From assembly GCF_947568905.1 (NCBI RefSeq), contig NC_079164.1, positions 18,042,001-18,106,000 of the forward strand: a stretch of DNA of 64,000 nt, written 5' to 3'. The notes under the pieces are model-generated. The model was not told where the DNA came from. It searched no databases and saw nothing but the letters and a program-made list of their open reading frames with translations. Positions 37,701-44,994 of the stretch are shown here, piece after piece; position 1 is the stretch's first letter, and every line of letters begins with the position of its first letter. The translations under genes and the position numbers were made by a program. The stretch comes from Ostrea edulis (Eukaryota).

Positions 37701-40313
37701 GTGTATTAACATTAAAACATCAAAACATATGATTAATTTGGACTCATCCTAAAGTCATAACCTTGGGTTTTGATTGAAATTCACCATTTTTTGTACATCC
37801 TTTCCTGCTATTCCTAAGTTTGCATTTAGATTTTATACAGTATCAGCAAACTTACACATGAATACTATACTAAGTTTGGCCCCACCCTGGGGTCAGAACC
37901 CTTCCTCTGGGGGTCATCAAATTTACAATCTTGATAAAAGACTACCTGCTCTATCCATTTACTTTCAATTTAGTATCAACAGCACTAAAGAAGATGTTAT
38001 TTAAGTGTTTTACACATAAACACTATTTACCAAGTTTGGCCCCATTCTGGGGTCAGAACCCCTACTCCGGGGATCATGAAATTTACAATTTTGGTAGAGG
38101 CCTTCCTGCTCTCCATCACCATGCATTTAGTTTTTCTTACACATGTGCGATTCTTGAGAAGAAGATTTTTGAAAATTGGTCAATTTTGAGCAGTTTTTGC
38201 CCCGCCCCTAAGGCCCCAGGAATCCTGAAATTTAGAATTTATGTTCCCCTTGTTCCAAAGATACTTCATATTAAATATGAAAATAATTGGAATGATAGTT
38301 ATCAAGAAGAAGTTAAAAATGTCTATTGTTCACACATTTAATAACTGACCAGTTTGGCCCCACCCAGATACCAAAACCCCTACCCCTGGGATCATCAAAT
38401 TTATAATTTTGGTAAAGGACTACCTGCTCTTTCTAAATATTTGTTTAGTTTCAATATAGTATCAACAGCACTAAAGAAGATGTTATTTAAGTGTTTTACA
38501 CATAAACACTATTTACCAAGTTTGGCCCCACTCTGGGGTCAAAACCCCTACCCTGGGGATCATGAAATTTACAATTTTGGTAGAGGCCTTCCTGCTCTCC
38601 ATCACCATACATTTAACTTTTCTTACACATGTGCAGTTCTTGAGAAGAAGATTTTTGAAAATCGGTCAATTTTGGGCAGGTTTTGCCCCGCCCCTAAGGC
38701 CCCAGGGGTGCTGGAGACTTGAAATTTACAATTTATGTCCCCTTTGTCCCAAAGATACTGCATACCAAATTTGAAAAGAATTGGACTGGTAGTTATCAAG
38801 AAGAAGTTCAATTGTTAATGCACGACGGATGACTGACGACGGACGACAACCGATTGCAAATTGAAATTCTTCCGAAGGAAACTTGAATTATCATGTGTCA
38901 TAGGAAGTGTTGACGGACGGGTGGATATAGACAGAGTGATTACTATAGGACACCCACCATATGATGGGCCTAAAAATGCAAGTTAGTTTATCATGACCAT
39001 GCGTTTACAATCACCCCAATGACTGTGTTCATACTACAATTCTAGAACAATGTAACAGTTTTTCTTTCTGTATCTGTACACCTACTAGTCCTTGTCTGTT
39101 TAATGAATACTCTCCACAGTACATGACAGTGTATACTCATCCTCAAATCGATTACAGACTTAACTTTGTATGAAACAGGTACTGTTGAGAACTGTAAAAG
39201 AAGCATGCTGTTTTTAACTTTCATACCTGTCTCAAGCTTCTGTTCATCTGCTGGCTCTTGCAAATGAGCCTTCCATTTCTCAGTCAAATGAAGGTGAAAA
39301 ATGTGACGTAGTAACTTCACTGCATAGTATTTGTTTGTCAGATTTCTATAACTGTACAAAATTTTATCATTTAGAAAGTTTGTATGCATTTCAAATCAGT
39401 AAAATAAGTTTTTTGAAAGTCATAGTGTTTTCTGAAACCAATGCACTATGTTACCACACAGAGCAGCCCGCAAGCTAAATATATCACACATAAACTTATG
39501 CATGCACTATTGCATTATAAAATCTCTCCCATCCCCAACTTTAATACAACGAGAAAATTAAATACTACCTTTCTGACACATACATTTGTTCTTGGTTGTT
39601 GTGAATATTAATGCATACGCCTTATAAAGCCAGTATTAGACATTGCAAACACATTGCATTATAGATAAATGCAAATAAAGATGTTCAACTTGATGAAAGT
39701 AGTAAGCTCATGAATACCTTTCATTATCATGAATGATTTCATTCAGCTCATTAATGATGACTTCAGCCGCATCATGCTCCTCCATCAGTGATACAACATC
39801 TGCAAACCCATCATCAGGAATTTCCTCCATTTTGTAAAATCTTGGAGACAACTGACTAACAAGTCCTCTCACAGCACGACCCACCACAATGTATGTTCCA
39901 AACTCTCTCCGCCAATCATGTGCTTTCTCCCGAGTATATCTAAGTAAAAGCTTTGGCCATCTGGCAAACAAAAGAGAAAACGGGAAGAATAAAACGTTTA
40001 ATTCTGAATGCAAGTTACACGTTTCGTGAGAAAGGATGAAATACAATAGTGCTGAAGGCCCATCTCTTTCATTAAGACTTTATCTCTATCTCACACTCAC
40101 ATTACCGTATGTCAAATTTTTCATTGCATAACATCTCTCTTACCTCTGATGGAGTTTTCTTCTCCATAATTCATTTGACAAACATAAATTCCGCATTTTT
40201 GTGCATGTTTGGGATATATTACATACGTCTCTAAATGATATTTCTCTTCCCTGCAGTACATGATCAATAATTTCATTTGGCAAATCGAGAAACTCTCTCT
40301 GCCTGCAATCCAT
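26046..40313 (-). CDS. FBXO21: F-box only protein 21 (F-box, transglutaminase-like core, YccV/HspQ-like C-terminal domain), 578 aa; coding exons 40144-40313, 39718-39960, 39227-39351, 36554-36688, 35600-35730, 35240-35373, 34867-34969, 34539-34718, 32081-32200, 27459-27529, 26451-26608, 26046-26212
   Basis: Phase-consistent GT-AG model (1737 nt); F-box FLDLPNEIIDHVL..ELWRRKLHQRW; GIPISLSVLY..VNFPSHFLLKW; YIDAF; QPFYNVLVEDGSIRYAA; HPDVGKYF. Confidence 0.93.
26376..26415. repeat. (AG)n microsatellite
   Basis: Direct reading. Confidence 0.95.
27561..28620. repeat. 39-bp minisatellite, about 27 copies, FBXO21 intron 9
   Basis: Unit AGCATGTGTTACAGCTCCCTCACATCTATAACAAGATTT, degenerating toward 28620. 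Confidence 0.95.
28590..28765. repeat. 176-bp direct repeat, copy 1 (copy 2 at 31003-31178)
   Basis: AATGTAGTGTGTTACAGC...TCTTTTATCAA appears identical at both positions. Confidence 0.92.
28752..29516 (+). CDS. Tyrosine recombinase, 5'-truncated
   Basis: Frame open from 28752; core-binding FIAYL..LSANTVELYVRALSFYHK; catalytic R (GLLRVGEL), K (HSKTDQ), HxxR (HSFRIGRAT), GRWKS, terminal Y. Confidence 0.9.
   Translation, partial: KSFINFIAYLSIQKLSANTVELYVRALSFYHKFKGLKDTTKSFLIAKALEGLKRSRGKAVDTRCPITRPLLRELIQSLPSICSSPYEAKLFTSAFSLAYFGLLRVGELTITNKIMNSHCIQFQNVMVHKQSHIKVTIPHSKTDQTARKTTLIIPKELETVLCPVRAISNYLSIRPSTSQENPFFIHINSRPLTRYQFNAVLQKTLNFLGKQGHFGTHSFRIGRATDMALHGVSDQVIKTSGRWKSQVYSSYVRM
28766..31002 (+). 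mobile_element. 5'-truncated Ngaro/DIRS-like tyrosine-recombinase retroelement fragment
   Basis: YR ORF followed by an SGNH hydrolase ORF, the gene order known from Ngaro elements; gag/RT/RNase H absent. Confidence 0.8.
29562..30176 (+). CDS. SGNH/GDSL-type hydrolase of the YR element; no AUG start
   Basis: Block I WIVGSS, block II AIRGL, block III HLGSND, block V DGAH; frame open from 29562. Confidence 0.8.
   Translation, partial: SKQSFSGILKNIWIVGSSIPFWAGELAVTQPGGRNLNLPACIKWHAIRGLQWQQLDPHILKLLRTATPPNFLVIHLGSNDLTTTGLTSKKLIEEIQCSFLRYNVLLPNTKLIWSSILPRLYWHGAPLNCGGKIDKKRKKINRKIRSFVLDLGGAVISHPNISPKVTELFRHDGAHLSMMGNRLYLHNLQGGLSSFLSNTAREFP
31003..31178. repeat. 176-bp direct repeat, copy 2
   Basis: Matches 28590-28765. 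Confidence 0.92.
32213..32870 (-). mobile_element. HINE/pearl-like element
   Basis: Ends AACAAGAC..GCTCACC and AAGCTCATTTGACCCTTTGGTTCTGGTGAGCTAAAA (reverse of the TTTTAGCTCACC 5' end). Confidence 0.6.
32928..33981. mobile_element. ~1.05-kb MITE with ~65-bp TIRs and a short-palindrome interior
   Basis: TATGGAGCGCCAAATTAACATAAACTCAAATAATTGAAGATATC / GATATCTTCAATTATTTGAGTTTATGTTAATTTGGGGCTCCATA; AAAAGA on both flanks (or a TA TSD). Confidence 0.85.
34055..34528. repeat. 40-bp minisatellite, about 12 copies, abutting the FBXO21 exon 8 donor
   Basis: Unit ACATATTACAGTCTCTAGATTAAGCTTTCTCTATAACGCA. Confidence 0.95.
35809..36056. repeat. ~133-bp tandem duplication of a repeat fragment
   Basis: AACAATGTGTCTTTAGG..CACCAT.CCCTTGACCATGACCAA at 35809 and 35942. 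Confidence 0.75.
36799..37010. mobile_element. TA-flanked MITE (Tc1/mariner-like)
   Basis: TACTATATGGCAACTTTTATTC / GAATAAAAGCTGGTTTACAGTA imperfect TIRs. Confidence 0.55.
37492..38860 (-). mobile_element. HINE/pearl-like element with an internal ~480-bp duplication
   Basis: AACAAGAGGCCAACAGGCCTTATTGGTCACCTGA terminus; ~37850-38330 is repeated at ~38350-38810. Confidence 0.6.
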
Positions 40314-41195
40314 TTTTGTTTATAAATAACACTGAATTCCGAACCCGACCCTTTACCAGATTTGCGATCCCGACAGTCAATTAACGGAAAACAGTTTTCA
40401 TAGTCAGGTTTGCATTTATAATATAGGAAACCCCTATGATATAAATGCAGAGGGGTTTCAGGAACCTGACTAAAGTTTTCATTGCTTCGCACGTAAAATC
40501 AGGGTTGGGGGTTGGAGGGGGGGGGGGGGTAGGTACGGTGGGCCCACTTTTTTGACAATGACCATTATTTTTCTGCCCGCCCCCCCCCCCCCCCCCCCCT
40601 CCTCCATTTTATGACAGTAGAAGTTAATGAGATATTCATGAAGTAAGCTACGGAAGCCCATTAGTGCAAACCAAAACTAAATAAAAAACGAAATTATTAT
40701 ATAAAAAACGAAATTATTATATAAAAAACGAAAACTAAATAAAAAACGAAATTATTATATAAAAAACGAAATTATTATATAAAAAACGAAAACACTAAAT
40801 AAAAAACGAAATTATTATATAAAAAACGAAATTATTAAATAAAAAACGAAATTAATAAATAAAAACGAAAATATTAAATAAAAAACGAAATCAAGAACAG
40901 TTTTTGAGAATATAATGTGTGTGTGTCAGTGGAGCTTAACAAGGAAGGAAACATGGCTCCTAATTCTTTGATTTACTGCGATTTCATCATCGCCAATGGA
41001 GTTTTACAGAAATCTAATGACATTACAAATTAGCCAACTTATCCATTCACTACACGTTTATCTACTATGTTCGCTGAAAGGTCCCAAACCTCGTGTATCG
41101 GATTACAGGATTTCTCCAAAATTACTTCAACACTAGCCCCCATAAATCTAAGAATATATATGGCTCCCATCAGCCACATACCTCAACAATCACTT

Positions 41196-41302
41196 GACTC
41201 TACACTAATTAAGTGTTTCGGCGGTGTGAAAATTGAGCAAATTGATTGGATTGATCGATAGATTGAAGTTTAGCTGCATGCAGATCCGCCTCATCAGAAG
41301 TC
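41196..41302 (-). ncRNA. Type I hammerhead ribozyme, sense to the PLE RT and to FBXO21
   Basis: Exact inverted copy of 42757-42863. Confidence 0.85.
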
Positions 41303-41321
41303 TATTTGCACTTCACAATTA

Positions 41322-42416
41322 TCATGCAGGTTGATTATTCTGAAATGAAGGTGTGCGCATATCCCTTAAATTTTTATTGCGTTGGTATGAACCACACTAT
41401 AGGTACAATGTAGAACAGAGAAAACGTCTTTGTCTCTCTGGAGGGTGTGCCATTAATTTAAAAGCTTTTGCTTTTTGGTGGGTTGTATTTGGTGATAAAA
41501 ACAAGGGGTATACCCGGTTTTTTGCTTTTATTTACACCCGATAACAGAGGTGGCTCGATCCTAGTTATTAAGTACCACTTGTACTTTTTTTATTGATTTA
41601 ATTATCACTATAGCCCCTCTTTAGAGGGTTTGTTTTGAAATCTTTAAGAATTTCTTCAATCATTTCAATTAATTTATTCACTCAAATCATTCATACAATG
41701 GTACACGAGGTACATGAATATATAAGTTAGTATTTAAACAACATTGCCACGGGTACAAGTATATAACTAATACATACACATGTATGTGCATTAGCACAAA
41801 ATAAAGGTGGAGGACATAATGCATATAATTTAATATATATACATCTTAGGAAGGACAGCAGACTAACTTATGGATATACATAGTTGCTTTTTTTAAAAAC
41901 TGTTTTAGGTTTCATGTTGTCATTAACTCTCTACATTTCAGTGTATTTGGTAAATGACAATATCTAGGAACCCAAAATTCTTTCCGTAGAGCGGATAGTA
42001 CTTTACATTCTAAGATAAAGTGGTATATTCGTCGGCTAATTTACCAGTAAATATGGCAAATAGTTTCACCTTTTATAAATCTCTTATAAACTGAAGGATA
42101 ATGTGCACTTTTTCGTTCCAGTTTGTAGGTTTGATGTACGTTTTCAAATCTAGAATGCGAGTTGCCTCAAATCACTTTCCTCTATACACCGTACTGCCCA
42201 AGAAATGCATTTTATTTACAGATATTTCACACGTGAATTTAAGCAGTTGATGAGCAGAATTTGCTATAGCGAATAAATCATGGCCGGATTTCTTTTTCTT
42301 CACCATGAACATAATAAAATAAAGCCATCGTCATGATAACGCACTTGGTACGTTATGCGATCCTTGATTATTTGATGTAGTCGGATATCGCATACAGATG
42401 GGGAGCATTTAGACCC
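41322..42416 (-). pseudogene. Decayed Penelope-like reverse transcriptase C-terminal half (palm/thumb)
   Basis: GSKCSPSVCDIRLHQII..RYHDDGF (42416-42321), LKFTCEIS..HFL..KTYIKPT, YKRFIKGETI, KRGYSD, IPLVFITKYNP, YQRNKNLRDM (41387-41358), stop TGA 41324-41322; several frameshifts and stops. Confidence 0.8.
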
Positions 42417-42756
42417 TTATAACACATCCAAATATCTGACCCCAAATTTCCTGAAAATTCCACAAAAATTGCTGAAATATACTCTTATATTAAGTAGTAA
42501 ATGGAGAATTCTGCATACTTTTACTATATTATGAAACTTCCACTATATAGGTCCCCAATAAATAAAATAGCTATTACCCACCAAAAAGCAAAAGCTTTTA
42601 AATTAATGGCACACCCTCCAGAGAGACAAAGACGTTTTCTCTGTTCTACATTGTACCTATAGTGTGGTTCATACCAACGCAATAAAAATTTAAGGGATAT
42701 GCGCACACCTTCATTTCAGAATAATCAACCTGCATGATAATTGTGAAGTGCAAATA

Positions 42757-42863
42757 GACTTCTGATGAGGCGGATCTGCATGCAGCTAAACTTCAATCTA
42801 TCGATCAATCCAATCAATTTGCTCAATTTTCACACCGCCGAAACACTTAATTAGTGTAGAGTC
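42757..42863 (+). ncRNA. Type I hammerhead ribozyme in the inverted arm
   Basis: Stem I GACTT/GAGTC; core CTGATGA (42762-42768); stem II GGCGG/CCGCC with a 61-nt loop; GAAA (42840-42843); stem III CACT-TAATT-AGTG; cleavage triplet GUA, cut after 42858. Confidence 0.85.
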
Positions 42864-44994
42864 AAGTGATTGTTGAGGTATGTGGCTGATGGGAGCCATA
42901 TATATTCTTAGATTTATGGGGGCTAGTGTTGAAGTAATTTTGGAGAAATCCTGTAATCCGATACACGAGGTTTGGGACCTTTCAGCGAACATAGTAGATA
43001 AACGTGTAGTGAATGGATAAGTTGGCTAATTTGTAATGTCATTAGATTTCTGTAAAACTCCATTGGCGATGATGAAATCGCAGTAAATCAAAGAATTAGG
43101 AGCCATGTTTCCTTCCTTGTTAAGCTCCACTGACACACACACATTATATTCTCAAAAACTGTTCTTGATTTCGTTTTTTATTTAATATTTTCGTTTTTAT
43201 TTATTAATTTCGTTTTTTATTTAATAATTTCGTTTTTTATATAATAATTTCGTTTTTTATTTAGTGTTTTCGTTTTTTATATAATAATTTCGTTTTTTAT
43301 TTAGTTTTCGTTTTTTTATATAATAATTTCGTTTTTTATATAATAATTTCGTTTTTTATATAATAATTTCGATTTTTATATAATAATTTCGTTTTTTATA
43401 TAATAATTTCGTATTTTATTTAGTTTTGGTTTGCACTAATGGGCTTCCGTAGTAAGCTTGGAAATAAAGTATGAATAAAAAATAGCTATGTATTTAGCAA
43501 AGTATGAAGATTAATTTTTAAGGTTTGGGGGTAAATTTGATTTTTTGAGTTTTATTTTTCTTCTTTTATCATAATTTTGGTTTTCAAGCGTTTTTGAGAT
43601 GCCATCCACCAACTTTTCTCCCGGCTGCGCCCCCTCCCCCTTGAAATTTGATACTGTAGTATATATATCATCAAAACATGCATCCACAACCACATGAAGT
43701 ACGGACGGTACTATACATATAACAACACCCCTTCCCCATCTGATTTTTTTTTGTGGCGATAATTTCTCCGAAATGTGTGGATTCCCTGTAGATCTATCCC
43801 ATCCCTTCGATTTCATGCTTTTTGTAAGCTTTAAAGATTGGCGTTGTATCGGCGGCGTCCTTCAAGCAAAGGGTTCTCAAGATATTGAGCGGACAATATA
43901 TTCCTATGTCCAGAGTAGATTGACCATTTCATTTTGACCCCTATTGATTTTTAGATCATATGGTCAAAGGTCAATCTACTCTGGACATAGGAATATATTA
44001 TCCCCTAATATCCTAAAGACCCAAATAAAATACCGTATATTTGGTTTCTTGACGGATCACTGGATGTGGTCATCTATTGTGGACACTATTGTTATTTACC
44101 TGGCCAAGAGATCAGGGTGCTGTGCCGCGTACACTTACGCGTGATGTACACAGGAAGGGTCTCAGGGCTGTCCTCAGTGTTTCTGTGGTCATAGTGTTTG
44201 TATAATGGTTGCATCCCTATGACTAGATGACACACAGTCTACCCCCCCCCCCCTCTTTCTCTCTTTTACTCCCAGTCATTGGCTCAATGAATAATTTCTT
44301 TTATAAAAATAGAACTATCATGAATTGATAATATAAATTATTTCAATAAGTTACAAGTTTTAGAAATTAATGGGCAAATTATTGTTTCATTTCTGATTGT
44401 GTCATTTTATAATACATATATATAAAGGGGGGAAATTACAATTATATTAAAATTGCGTTGTTCAGGGGTCTTTTAAAAAACAGTTGAATTACAAGAAAAT
44501 GCAGTTGTGGACAGGTTAATGCTATCAAAACTCTAGTATACAGGGCTTCCTCAAAATCTAAAGAATGCCTGTACAGGTACTGGCTGTTATTGTTATCAAA
44601 ACACCTCTTTGGGGTAGCTCTAGATCACAGTTTCTGCAGATGTCACTCCACCTGAGATCTATTGTTAAATGTTTGATTGACAGACGGCTAACAGTTTGGG
44701 GGTGTTAACTTAAAAGTTGGGTCTTTAAAGGACACATATCATGTTTTCAAAGTATACAGAATTATATGCATTTTGTCTTCCTTATACTTATAGAAATTAA
44801 TTGTAATATATAGTTCGTTCCTAAAGTATTGCGATAATTAGCCACAATACGGACTAAGCCCCGATTTCAAAAAGCCTAGGTACAGTGACGTCATATGCGA
44901 CCTTCCTCGATCAACTTGTTGCAAAAGTAGTGTTAGATATTTTTAAAAACTCGGGTTTCAGGGGCCTAATTTATTTACCATGGATAACATTTTA

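What the first reader, a model, noticed from the sequence alone, without database searches (positions are those of the whole stretch)
40642..43458. Fold-back Penelope-like element with two hammerhead-bearing arms, an 8-bp TSD and a dead RT
Seen in the sequence: 834- and 875-bp arms in inverted orientation that differ mainly in copy number of a 20-bp AAAAAACGAAATTATTATAT repeat; a perfect AGTAAGCT direct repeat outside them; and a spacer with frameshifted PLE RT motifs. Established: PLEs form inverted pseudo-LTR structures and carry type I hammerheads. Inference: near-identical arms around a heavily decayed RT suggest a non-autonomous unit mobilised recently in trans, either retrozyme-like or as a TIR-bounded cassette. 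It ends about 335 bp upstream of the FBXO21 ATG.
Basis: partly seen in the sequence, partly recalled or inferred. Interest (0 to 1): 0.85.

Follow-up and report, generated by a model that had tools for sequence, protein, structure and literature searches.

The report
Fold-back DNA transposon carrying dead Penelope
This is a recently inserted, non-autonomous cut-and-paste type DNA transposon of an oyster that carries a dead Penelope-like retroelement fragment with a hammerhead motif as a passenger; this is ordinary transposon biology, not a fold-back Penelope element.

Summary
Two inverted arms (40649-41483 and 42576-43451) are 100% identical over 728 bp and differ only in 20-bp repeat number. 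They flank a 1.09-kb spacer with frameshifted Penelope-like (PLE) RT remnants. Each arm has a complete type I hammerhead motif.

The interpretation does not hold.
- The target duplication is 6 bp (GTAAGC), not 8. The element ends are TACGG...CCGTA. Of 30 paired copies, 23 have perfect 6-bp duplications; the 8-bp model fits 2.
- The family has about 154 termini genome-wide. Each end has a 24-bp terminal inverted repeat plus 20-bp subterminal repeats. Deletion derivatives of 262-1190 bp keep both ends.
- The PLE's own 3' end lies about 520 bp inside each element end, so the PLE (partial pLTR, dead RT, hammerhead) is nested cargo.
- The window copy belongs to a fold-back subfamily of six copies that share one rearrangement, marked by a 137-bp filler from another repeat. 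Four of them have different 6-bp duplications.
- One public oyster run carries the empty site with a single AGTAAGCT, so the insertion is polymorphic.

Most likely it is a class II element moved in trans by an unidentified transposase. The superfamily is unresolved. Interest is modest.

The parts
40643..40648 (.). Left copy of the 6-bp target-site duplication, GTAAGC
   Evidence: 23 of 30 family copies have perfect 6-bp TSDs flanking TACGG...CCGTA. The empty-site contig in run X6 carries a single copy.
40649..43451 (.). The whole element (2803 bp): a fold-back derivative of a non-autonomous TIR transposon family
40649..40672 (+). Left 24-bp terminal inverted repeat, TACGGAAGCCCATTAGTGCAAACC
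   Evidence: 154 genomic matches at up to 2 mismatches, 0 for the reversed control pattern.
40673..40891 (+). Left subterminal array of 20-bp repeats (10.9 copies)
   Evidence: TRF score 330-371.
40892..41149 (.). Transposon backbone segment of about 256 bp, lying between the repeat array and the PLE 3' end and forming part of the left arm
   Evidence: No homology to PLE relatives L043-L045. The boundary is set by the end of the pLTR repeat...ATATTCTTAC.
41196..41302 (-). Type I hammerhead motif in the left arm. It has CUGAUGA, a GGCGG/CCGCC helix II with a 61-nt loop, GAAA, a 5-bp helix III, a GUA cleavage site after 41201 and a 5-bp helix I.
   Evidence: Descriptor hit, 0 of 20,000 shuffles. 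Core and stems are conserved and the loop is diverged in PLE relatives. The constrained fold is -16.8 against an MFE of -18.5 kcal/mol. No Rfam hit.
41343..42438 (-). Dead PLE RT remnant: RT motif B to the C-terminal end of the ORF, in three frames with stops. Its last 141 bp (41343-41483) lie inside the left arm.
   Evidence: tblastn against the L043/L044 ORFs: 42416-42315, 42282-42136, 42121-42050, 41654-41595, 41526-41479, 41417-41343. RVT_1 E=0.034 for one 38-aa piece. The same lesions occur in L004, L006 and L009.
42439..42575 (.). 137-bp filler DNA at the fold-back junction, derived from an unrelated dispersed repeat
   Evidence: 40 matching places in all: six in the fold-back copies and 34 elsewhere, about 30 of those full-length at 85-98% identity. 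Absent from canonical copies.
42576..43451 (.). Right arm: an inverted duplicate of the left arm. It holds the ORF tail (42642-42716), the hammerhead, the PLE 3' end near 42908, the backbone, the repeats and the terminus.
42757..42863 (+). Type I hammerhead motif in the right arm, with cleavage after 42858
43168..43432 (-). Right subterminal array of 20-bp repeats (about 12.7 copies)
43428..43451 (-). Right 24-bp terminal inverted repeat
43452..43457 (.). Right copy of the 6-bp target-site duplication, GTAAGC
40140..40313 (-).
   Evidence: ORF. Pfam F-box-like E=2.1e-10. Identity as FBXO21 was not tested.

Best explanation
The element (40649-43451) is a non-autonomous class II (DNA) transposon. 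Its ends are 24-bp terminal inverted repeats followed by arrays of a 20-bp subterminal repeat, and insertion duplicates 6 bp of an S-WWWW-S target.

An ancestor of the family acquired a nested Penelope-like insertion. This was an 81-bp partial pLTR, a 5'-truncated RT body and a full 3' pLTR with a hammerhead. The RT died, and the composite then amplified as DNA to about 80 copies.

In one lineage a DNA-level rearrangement replaced the right-hand internal part with 137 bp of filler from another repeat plus an inverted copy of the left 875 bp. This fold-back version kept transposing (six copies). The window copy is a young, still polymorphic insertion 336 bp upstream of an F-box gene.

Shown here: the anatomy, the TSD length, the family structure, the nested position of the PLE, the shared rearrangement and the empty-site allele.

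Inferred: mobilisation in trans by a transposase that binds the TIR and the 20-bp repeats and makes a 6-bp staggered cut; origin of the fold-back by strand switching or gap repair; and the PLE RT and hammerhead being passengers that are not needed for mobility.
For: (1) 23 of 30 paired copies have perfect 6-bp TSDs next to precisely conserved TACGG...CCGTA ends, and 3 more match at 5 of 6.
(2) There are 154 termini genome-wide and none for the control pattern.
(3) Derivatives of 262, 555, 1050 and 1190 bp have lost internal sequence but keep both termini and perfect 6-bp TSDs. The 262-bp copy (L050) holds no PLE sequence at all.
(4) The PLE ends at ...ATATTCTTAC. That is where the upstream 81-bp partial pLTR ends, and where the related PLE copies L043-L045 diverge into their flanks. 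This point is about 520 bp inside the element end.
(5) L043, the related PLE copy analysed for repeats, is a direct partial tandem (3216-bp unit) with no inverted repeats. L043-L045 share only the RT and hammerhead/pLTR segments with this family and have none of its termini.
(6) Six fold-back copies share the same junctions and the same 137-bp filler, which is a piece of another repeat. Four of them have different perfect 6-bp TSDs: GTAAGC, CAAATG, ATAATG, GTTTCA.
(7) The same RT lesions are shared among copies, so amplification followed RT death.
(8) In run X6 a contig joins 40641 to 43451 with 8 shared letters, which is an empty site with one AGTAAGCT. Runs X1 and X4 have contigs that bridge the element/flank junctions.
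Against: No autonomous partner or transposase was found. Longer copies contain unrelated nested repeats. None of the top 150 hAT dimerisation-domain hits lies within 10 kb of an unpaired terminus. Further genome retrieval was blocked, so the superfamily is unresolved.

No PLE-free ancestral backbone was found; even subfamilies only 82-87% identical have the RT next to the 125-bp segment.

The short derivatives could be deletions that happened in place after insertion, so they do not prove that PLE-free units transpose.

The arms of a copy tend to be closer to each other than to other copies' arms (0-6 against 2-12 differences). That is also what regeneration of the arms at each insertion would give.

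The empty-site contig has only 22 letters on its short side.
Confidence: 0.78

Rival explanations
1. The unit is a Penelope-like retroelement. Its inverted arms are pseudo-LTRs formed when an inverted 5'-truncated copy is laid down at insertion, and it is mobilised in trans through RNA by a PLE reverse transcriptase.
For: PLE insertions often carry an inverted 5'-truncated copy that produces flanking inverted repeats, and pLTRs carry hammerheads (PMC8557442). The internal part is PLE-derived. The two arms of each copy share private variants.
Against: The PLE 3' end is about 520 bp inside the element end. A constant 6-bp TSD and exact ends at both sides in 23 of 30 copies do not fit the frequent 5' truncation and the 30-40-bp tail extensions described for PLEs. 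The inner junctions are identical among copies rather than made anew each time. Derivatives that lack the PLE 3' end and hammerhead keep both termini and their TSD. The related RT ORFs L043 and L044 end before any endonuclease domain.
Confidence: 0.08
2. A retrozyme-like unit. Transcripts across hammerhead copies self-cleave to give a circular RNA that is reverse-transcribed and reintegrated.
For: The hammerhead core is intact in both arms. Core and stems are conserved against a diverged loop in relatives.
Against: In the fold-back the two hammerheads lie on opposite strands, pointing outwards, so no single transcript contains both. In canonical copies the upstream pLTR piece holds only the 3' half of the motif. 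The TIR and 6-bp TSD anatomy is not that of retrozymes.
Confidence: 0.03
3. The second arm is an assembly artefact: a collapsed or mis-joined repeat.
For: The arms are 100% identical over 728 bp. No long reads could be examined. Short-read contigs across the inner junction could come from other copies.
Against: Five other loci on four chromosomes have the same fold-back architecture with the same filler and with slightly diverged arms. Contigs from independent runs cross the filler/right-arm junction (42515-42605, 0 differences) and both outer junctions.
Confidence: 0.03

Closest known systems
Non-autonomous class II TIR transposons with subterminal repeats and long or expandable inverted arms (Foldback-type elements of Drosophila; Galileo of the P superfamily). 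Cited from my own knowledge, not checked in a paper here.
   Same: Exact terminal inverted repeats, tandem subterminal repeats in both arms, a fixed-length TSD, internal-deletion derivatives, arms of variable length, and no coding capacity of their own.
   Different: The TSD is 6 bp (FB 9 bp and Galileo 7 bp, from memory). The termini are TACGG. The partner transposase is unknown. The internal part is a nested dead Penelope-like element with a hammerhead.
Penelope-like elements with pLTRs and hammerhead ribozymes (PMC8557442; Cervera and de la Pena 2014, as cited there)
   Same: The cargo has a PLE-type RT (YDxTxLYTN, GSxxSPxxxDI, RYxDDGF, FLx, KPTN motifs). It shows a partial tandem pLTR. A type I hammerhead lies about 50 nt from the PLE 3' end. 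Relatives have an ORF1 plus an RT with a DKN variant of the DKG motif.
   Different: The mobile unit's ends, its TSD and its amplification are not those of a PLE. The RT is dead. The hammerhead has a 61-nt helix II loop and a stable 5-bp helix III, and Rfam models do not detect it. The related RT ORFs L043 and L044 lack a GIY-YIG endonuclease.
DNA transposon groups reported to make 6-bp TSDs (hAT6-type hAT, IS3EU, Dada, Polinton/Maverick). From memory of Repbase classification, not checked here.
   Same: The 6-bp TSD. hAT-like termini follow YARNG, and TACGG matches 4 of those 5 positions. hAT-type elements also have subterminal repeats.
   Different: No transposase was linked to these termini, so membership in any of these groups is untested. 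Polinton termini (AG...CT) do not match.
Retrozymes (PMC4918200, PMC5680766)
   Same: A non-autonomous unit carrying hammerhead motifs.
   Different: Retrozymes have direct repeats, each with a hammerhead on the same strand, and propagate through circular RNA. Here the hammerheads are on opposite strands, and the unit has TIRs and a 6-bp TSD.

Membership tests
Class II TIR (cut-and-paste type) DNA transposon, non-autonomous | Terminal inverted repeats with precisely conserved ends in all copies | tested here: met
   The 24-bp TACGGAAGCCCATTAGTGCAAACC lies at both ends. 154 genomic termini, 0 for the control pattern.
Class II TIR (cut-and-paste type) DNA transposon, non-autonomous | Target-site duplication of fixed length | tested here: met
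   6 bp: perfect in 23 of 30 copies and 5 of 6 in 3 more. Older copies are degraded.
Class II TIR (cut-and-paste type) DNA transposon, non-autonomous | Internal-deletion derivatives that keep both ends | tested here: met
   L050 262 bp, L051 555 bp, L052 1050 bp, L057 1190 bp and L055 1012 bp. Deletion in place after insertion cannot be excluded.
Class II TIR (cut-and-paste type) DNA transposon, non-autonomous | A cognate transposase encoded by an autonomous relative with the same termini | tested here: inconclusive
   None was found in 15 longer or odd copies, nor near unpaired termini among the top hAT hits.
Class II TIR (cut-and-paste type) DNA transposon, non-autonomous | Excision and DNA-only transposition | not testable with these tools
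   The empty-site allele with one TSD copy fits a never-occupied site and does not show excision.
Penelope-like element (as the mobile unit) | The unit's ends coincide with the PLE 3' end or pLTR, and the inverted arm is an inverted 5'-truncated PLE copy | tested here: not met
   The PLE 3' end (...ATATTCTTAC) is about 520 bp inside. The outer 24-bp terminus, the 20-bp repeats and the 256-bp segment are absent from PLE relatives.
Penelope-like element (as the mobile unit) | Frequent 5' truncation, variable junctions and tail extensions (PMC8557442) | tested here: not met
   Copies share identical inner junctions and exact ends at both sides.
Penelope-like element (the internal cargo only) | PLE-type RT with the DKG-region motif, and partial tandem pLTRs | tested here: met
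   The relative L043 has an RT ORF containing ADKNN and RVT_1 at E=2e-4, plus a 3216-bp partial tandem. The window remnants align to it at 57-60% over motifs B to E. No phylogeny against named PLE clades was made.
Penelope-like element (the internal cargo only) | Hammerhead ribozyme near the 3' end, within the pLTR | tested here: met
   The motif is complete and is conserved in L043-L045 about 50 nt from the unit end. Rfam models do not detect it, and cleavage has not been tested.
Penelope-like element (the internal cargo only) | GIY-YIG endonuclease | tested here: not met
   The ORFs of L043 and L044 stop at ...SSIIK about 60 nt before the hammerhead. The 3216-bp unit has no room for an endonuclease. 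EN-minus PLEs are known.
Hammerhead ribozyme, type I | Conserved core CUGAUGA...GAAA...UH with helices I, II and III | tested here: met
   One-sided compatible changes in relatives (G-U to G-C in helix I, G-C to G-U in helix II), no compensatory pair.
Hammerhead ribozyme, type I | Match to curated covariance models; self-cleavage | tested here: not met
   No Rfam hammerhead hit at E<=1 on 4.2 kb or at E<=10 on 151 nt, probably because of the 61-nt helix II loop. Self-cleavage cannot be tested here.
Retrozyme | Two hammerheads on the same strand in direct repeats, giving a circular RNA | tested here: not met
   The hammerheads are on opposite strands in the fold-back, and the upstream copy in canonical elements is only half a motif.

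The most novel reading that the evidence does not exclude
A DNA transposon has taken a Penelope pLTR with a working hammerhead (and possibly its promoter) on board, and the passenger matters. It could provide transcription or RNA processing that the composite element uses. Or the fold-back version could produce a long hairpin RNA (875-bp arms) cut by its own ribozymes, acting as a small-RNA source next to the F-box gene promoter. Either would make it a new way for hammerhead ribozymes to spread by DNA transposition.
Probability: 0.07. Interest if true: 0.65.

Novelty: new member of a known kind. Interest (0 to 1): 0.3.

Why it matters
The finding corrects a tempting misreading. An inverted-repeat unit with a dead Penelope RT and hammerheads looks like a fold-back PLE or an animal retrozyme. 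Its ends, its 6-bp duplication and its family structure are those of a DNA transposon that carries the PLE as nested cargo.

For annotation, this gives a defined oyster TE family of about 80 copies, with a fold-back subfamily. It also shows that ribozyme-bearing PLE fragments can be multiplied by DNA transposition.

For the locus, the insertion is polymorphic. It sits 336 bp upstream of an F-box gene start, so it is a candidate cis-regulatory variant. None of this touches an open question in the field.

Tried and rejected
- Rfam scans for hammerheads gave no hammerhead hit. The only hits were chance miRNA-like matches on a G/C hairpin at 40505-40607 and on a MITE at 43866-44027.
- The MFE fold of the hammerhead region is not the hammerhead fold (z = +0.6), so thermodynamics alone gives no support.
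- My first reading of 'RRPPGTSF...' in canonical copies as RT motif 1 was wrong. It is the translated upstream partial pLTR.
- Search for an autonomous partner:
  - Long copies L046-L049, L054 and L058 contain nested unrelated repeats.
  - The THAP-domain piece in L054 belongs to a repeat with more than 500 copies that is not linked to these termini.
  - hAT dimerisation-domain hits are not near unpaired termini.
- A search for a PLE-free ancestral backbone found none. L055 (1012 bp) retains the 81-bp pLTR piece and looks like a recombinant between the two 81-bp repeats.
- Literature searches for a prior description of this family found none.
Full report
**Observation.**
- The repeat finder reports arms 40756-41483 and 42576-43303, 728 nt, 100% complementary, 1092 nt apart.
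- A global alignment of the full arms (834 and 875 nt) shows that all differences are indels of 20, 19 and 2 bp and a few substitutions. All lie inside the 20-bp tandem arrays.
- TRF counts 10.9 copies in the left array and 12.7 in the right.
- AGTAAGCT flanks both sides.
- The window comes from an oyster. The genome is 895 Mb with chromosome-scale contigs C1-C10, and some runs that hold the stretch are labelled 'oyster metagenome'.

**The duplication is 6 bp, not 8.**
- The genome holds about 154 copies of the terminal 24-mer, and none of the reversed control pattern.
- In 30 copies with both ends, the bases next to TACGG...CCGTA form a perfect 6-bp direct repeat in 23 and match at 5 of 6 in 3 more.
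- So the element is 40649-43451 and the TSD is GTAAGC.
- The target consensus is S-WWWW-S.

**Family structure.**
- Most copies are not fold-backs. They match the window element only over its left arm and spacer up to window position 42438. They then carry about 416 bp that the window lacks, followed by a short right end of about 225-480 bp.
- A canonical copy is L004:1502-3965 (2464 bp). Read in the RT sense it contains, in order:
  - a TIR with 20-bp repeats (1-223);
  - a 125-bp segment;
  - an 81-bp partial pLTR (353-431);
  - a dead RT from the YDITPLYTN motif onward;
  - a full pLTR with the hammerhead (1688-1944);
  - a 256-bp segment;
  - a TIR with repeats (2200-2464).
- Deletion derivatives of 262 bp (L050, repeats and termini only, TSD AGTTTC), 555 bp (L051), 1050 bp (L052) and 1190 bp (L057) keep both termini and perfect 6-bp TSDs.
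- L055 (1012 bp) keeps a single 81-bp pLTR piece. That is what recombination between the two 81-bp repeats would leave.

**The PLE is cargo.**
- A protein search with an RT piece found less decayed relatives.
- L043 (C8:33.12 Mb) has a 246-aa ORF1 and an RT ORF of 484 aa or more. The RT ORF contains ADKNN, YDVTSLYTN, GSRCSPSVCDI, RYRDDGF, FLD and KPTN motifs, and ends at ...SSIIK with no endonuclease. Pfam reports RVT_1 at E=2e-4.
- L043 is a direct partial tandem with a 3216-bp period and no inverted repeats. These are the features described for PLEs (PMC8557442).
- L043-L045 share only the RT and the hammerhead/pLTR segment with the window family. They share none of the 24-bp terminus, the 20-bp repeats or the 256-bp and 125-bp segments.
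- The relatives diverge into their flanks right after ...GGGAGCCACTTTCTTTG. The upstream 81-bp partial pLTR of the canonical element ends at the homologous point (...ATATTCTTAC).
- So the PLE occupies positions 349-1944 of the canonical copy, and its 3' end is about 520 bp inside the element end.
- This is the anatomy of a typical PLE insertion: a 5'-truncated body preceded by a short piece of a second copy's 3' end. It is nested inside another element that supplies the termini.

**RT state.**
- In the window the remnants run on the minus strand from 42416 to 41343 in three reading frames with stops.
- They cover RT motif B to the ORF end. The last roughly 45 codons lie inside the arms.
- The same lesions are present in L004, L006 and L009, so amplification followed the death of the RT.

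**Hammerhead.**
- Each arm has CUGAUGA, a 5-bp helix II (GGCGG/CCGCC) closing a 61-nt loop, GAAA, a 5-bp helix III with a 5-nt loop, GUA, and a 5-bp helix I.
- The coordinates are 41196-41302 on the minus strand and 42757-42863 on the plus strand.
- A descriptor search finds exactly one motif per arm and none in 20,000 shuffles.
- Between this family and L043-L045, which are about 65-70% identical in the RT DNA, the core and stems are nearly invariant. The helix II loop cannot be aligned.
- The changes seen are one-sided and compatible with pairing. No compensatory pair was seen.
- The hammerhead fold costs -16.8 kcal/mol against an MFE of -18.5. Rfam models do not report it.
- I accept it as a hammerhead motif of the PLE cargo. 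Activity is untested.

**The fold-back.**
- Compared with canonical copies, the window element replaces everything beyond 42438 with two pieces: 137 bp (42439-42575) and an inverted copy of the left 875 bp.
- The 137 bp occurs at 85-98% identity at some 30 other places that are unrelated to this family. It is filler DNA from another repeat.
- Exactly six places combine the filler with the arms: the window, L002, L003, L027+L022 (one copy split by a nested insertion), L012 (with an internal deletion) and C2:35927147.
- Four of them have both ends and different perfect 6-bp TSDs.
- So a single rearrangement was followed by repeated transposition of the fold-back form.
- Within-copy arm differences are 0, 3, 3, 4 and 6. 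Between copies they are 2-12, and several private variants are present in both arms of one copy.
- I read this as gene conversion between inverted arms. It cannot be told apart here from arm regeneration at transposition.

**Recency.**
- Logan contigs of run X6 join 40641 to 43451, with 8 letters fitting either side. That is an empty site with one AGTAAGCT, at the depth of the flank. The shorter side of the joint is only 22 letters.
- Runs X1 and X4, from other studies, have contigs crossing the right junction (43426-43772). X4 also crosses the left junction (40580-40674).
- Contigs also cross the filler/right-arm junction, but these could come from other fold-back copies. Locus-specific long-read confirmation was not possible.

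**Mechanism.**
- The best-supported reading is a non-autonomous class II element moved in trans.
- The transposase was not found, and the superfamily is open. hAT6-type, IS3EU, Dada and Polinton elements are known to me as 6-bp duplicators, but this was not tested.
- The PLE-mobilised and retrozyme readings fail on four points: the position of the PLE end, the fixed TSD, the identical inner junctions, and the opposite-strand hammerheads.

**Context.** The left end lies 336 bp upstream of the ATG (40313, minus strand) of an F-box first exon. The left-arm hammerhead is in the same sense as that gene.

**Limits.**
- Genome retrieval ended.

Noticed in passing
window 43866-44027: A near-perfect 160-bp palindrome (MITE-like) about 410 bp to the right of the element. 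It gives weak plant-miRNA-like Rfam hits, all below gathering score. Read depth is enormous (word depth up to about 900,000 in X6), so it belongs to a very abundant repeat family.
   Followed up: no
window 40505-40607: A G-run and a C-run about 60 bp apart form a GC hairpin between the F-box ATG and the element. Short reads show 'opposite strands' joints at 40507/40576 and 40530/40599, and Logan contigs break here.
   Followed up: no
L043 (G000:C8:33120000-33129999) 3358-7134; also L044, L045: A Penelope-like element in the chromosome interior with a 3216-bp unit: ORF1 (246 aa, no Pfam hit), an RT ORF ending at ...SSIIK with no GIY-YIG endonuclease, and a hammerhead about 60 nt after the stop. 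It is arranged as a direct partial tandem. An EN-minus PLE away from chromosome ends may deserve its own look.
   Followed up: partly
L054 1869-2171 (-) = G000:C1:37914558-37914860: A 101-aa open frame that looks like a THAP zinc-finger domain (my reading from the sequence, not scanned against Pfam), nested in a copy of the family. It belongs to a repeat with more than 500 candidate places in the genome.
   Followed up: partly
L058 2298-3455 (G000:C5:69480500-69485950): A nested insertion inside a family copy. It carries two inverted, overlapping ORFs of 201 and 235 aa, nearly identical over about 180 aa, with a GIY-YIG-like motif (GIVYLARV...YVGLADTEFKLRYANH). This may be the endonuclease end of another PLE inserted in inverted-duplicate form.
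   Followed up: no
L053 590-3170 (G000:C4:93217589-93220169): Three tandem units of 860 bp. Each begins with the family's left terminus and 20-bp repeats followed by unrelated sequence: a tandem duplication that includes one transposon end and its flank.
   Followed up: no
window 41690-42050: About 370 bp within the RT thumb region of the cargo has no counterpart in the L043/L044 ORFs. It looks like an extra insertion or a badly decayed stretch, shared by the whole family.
   Followed up: no
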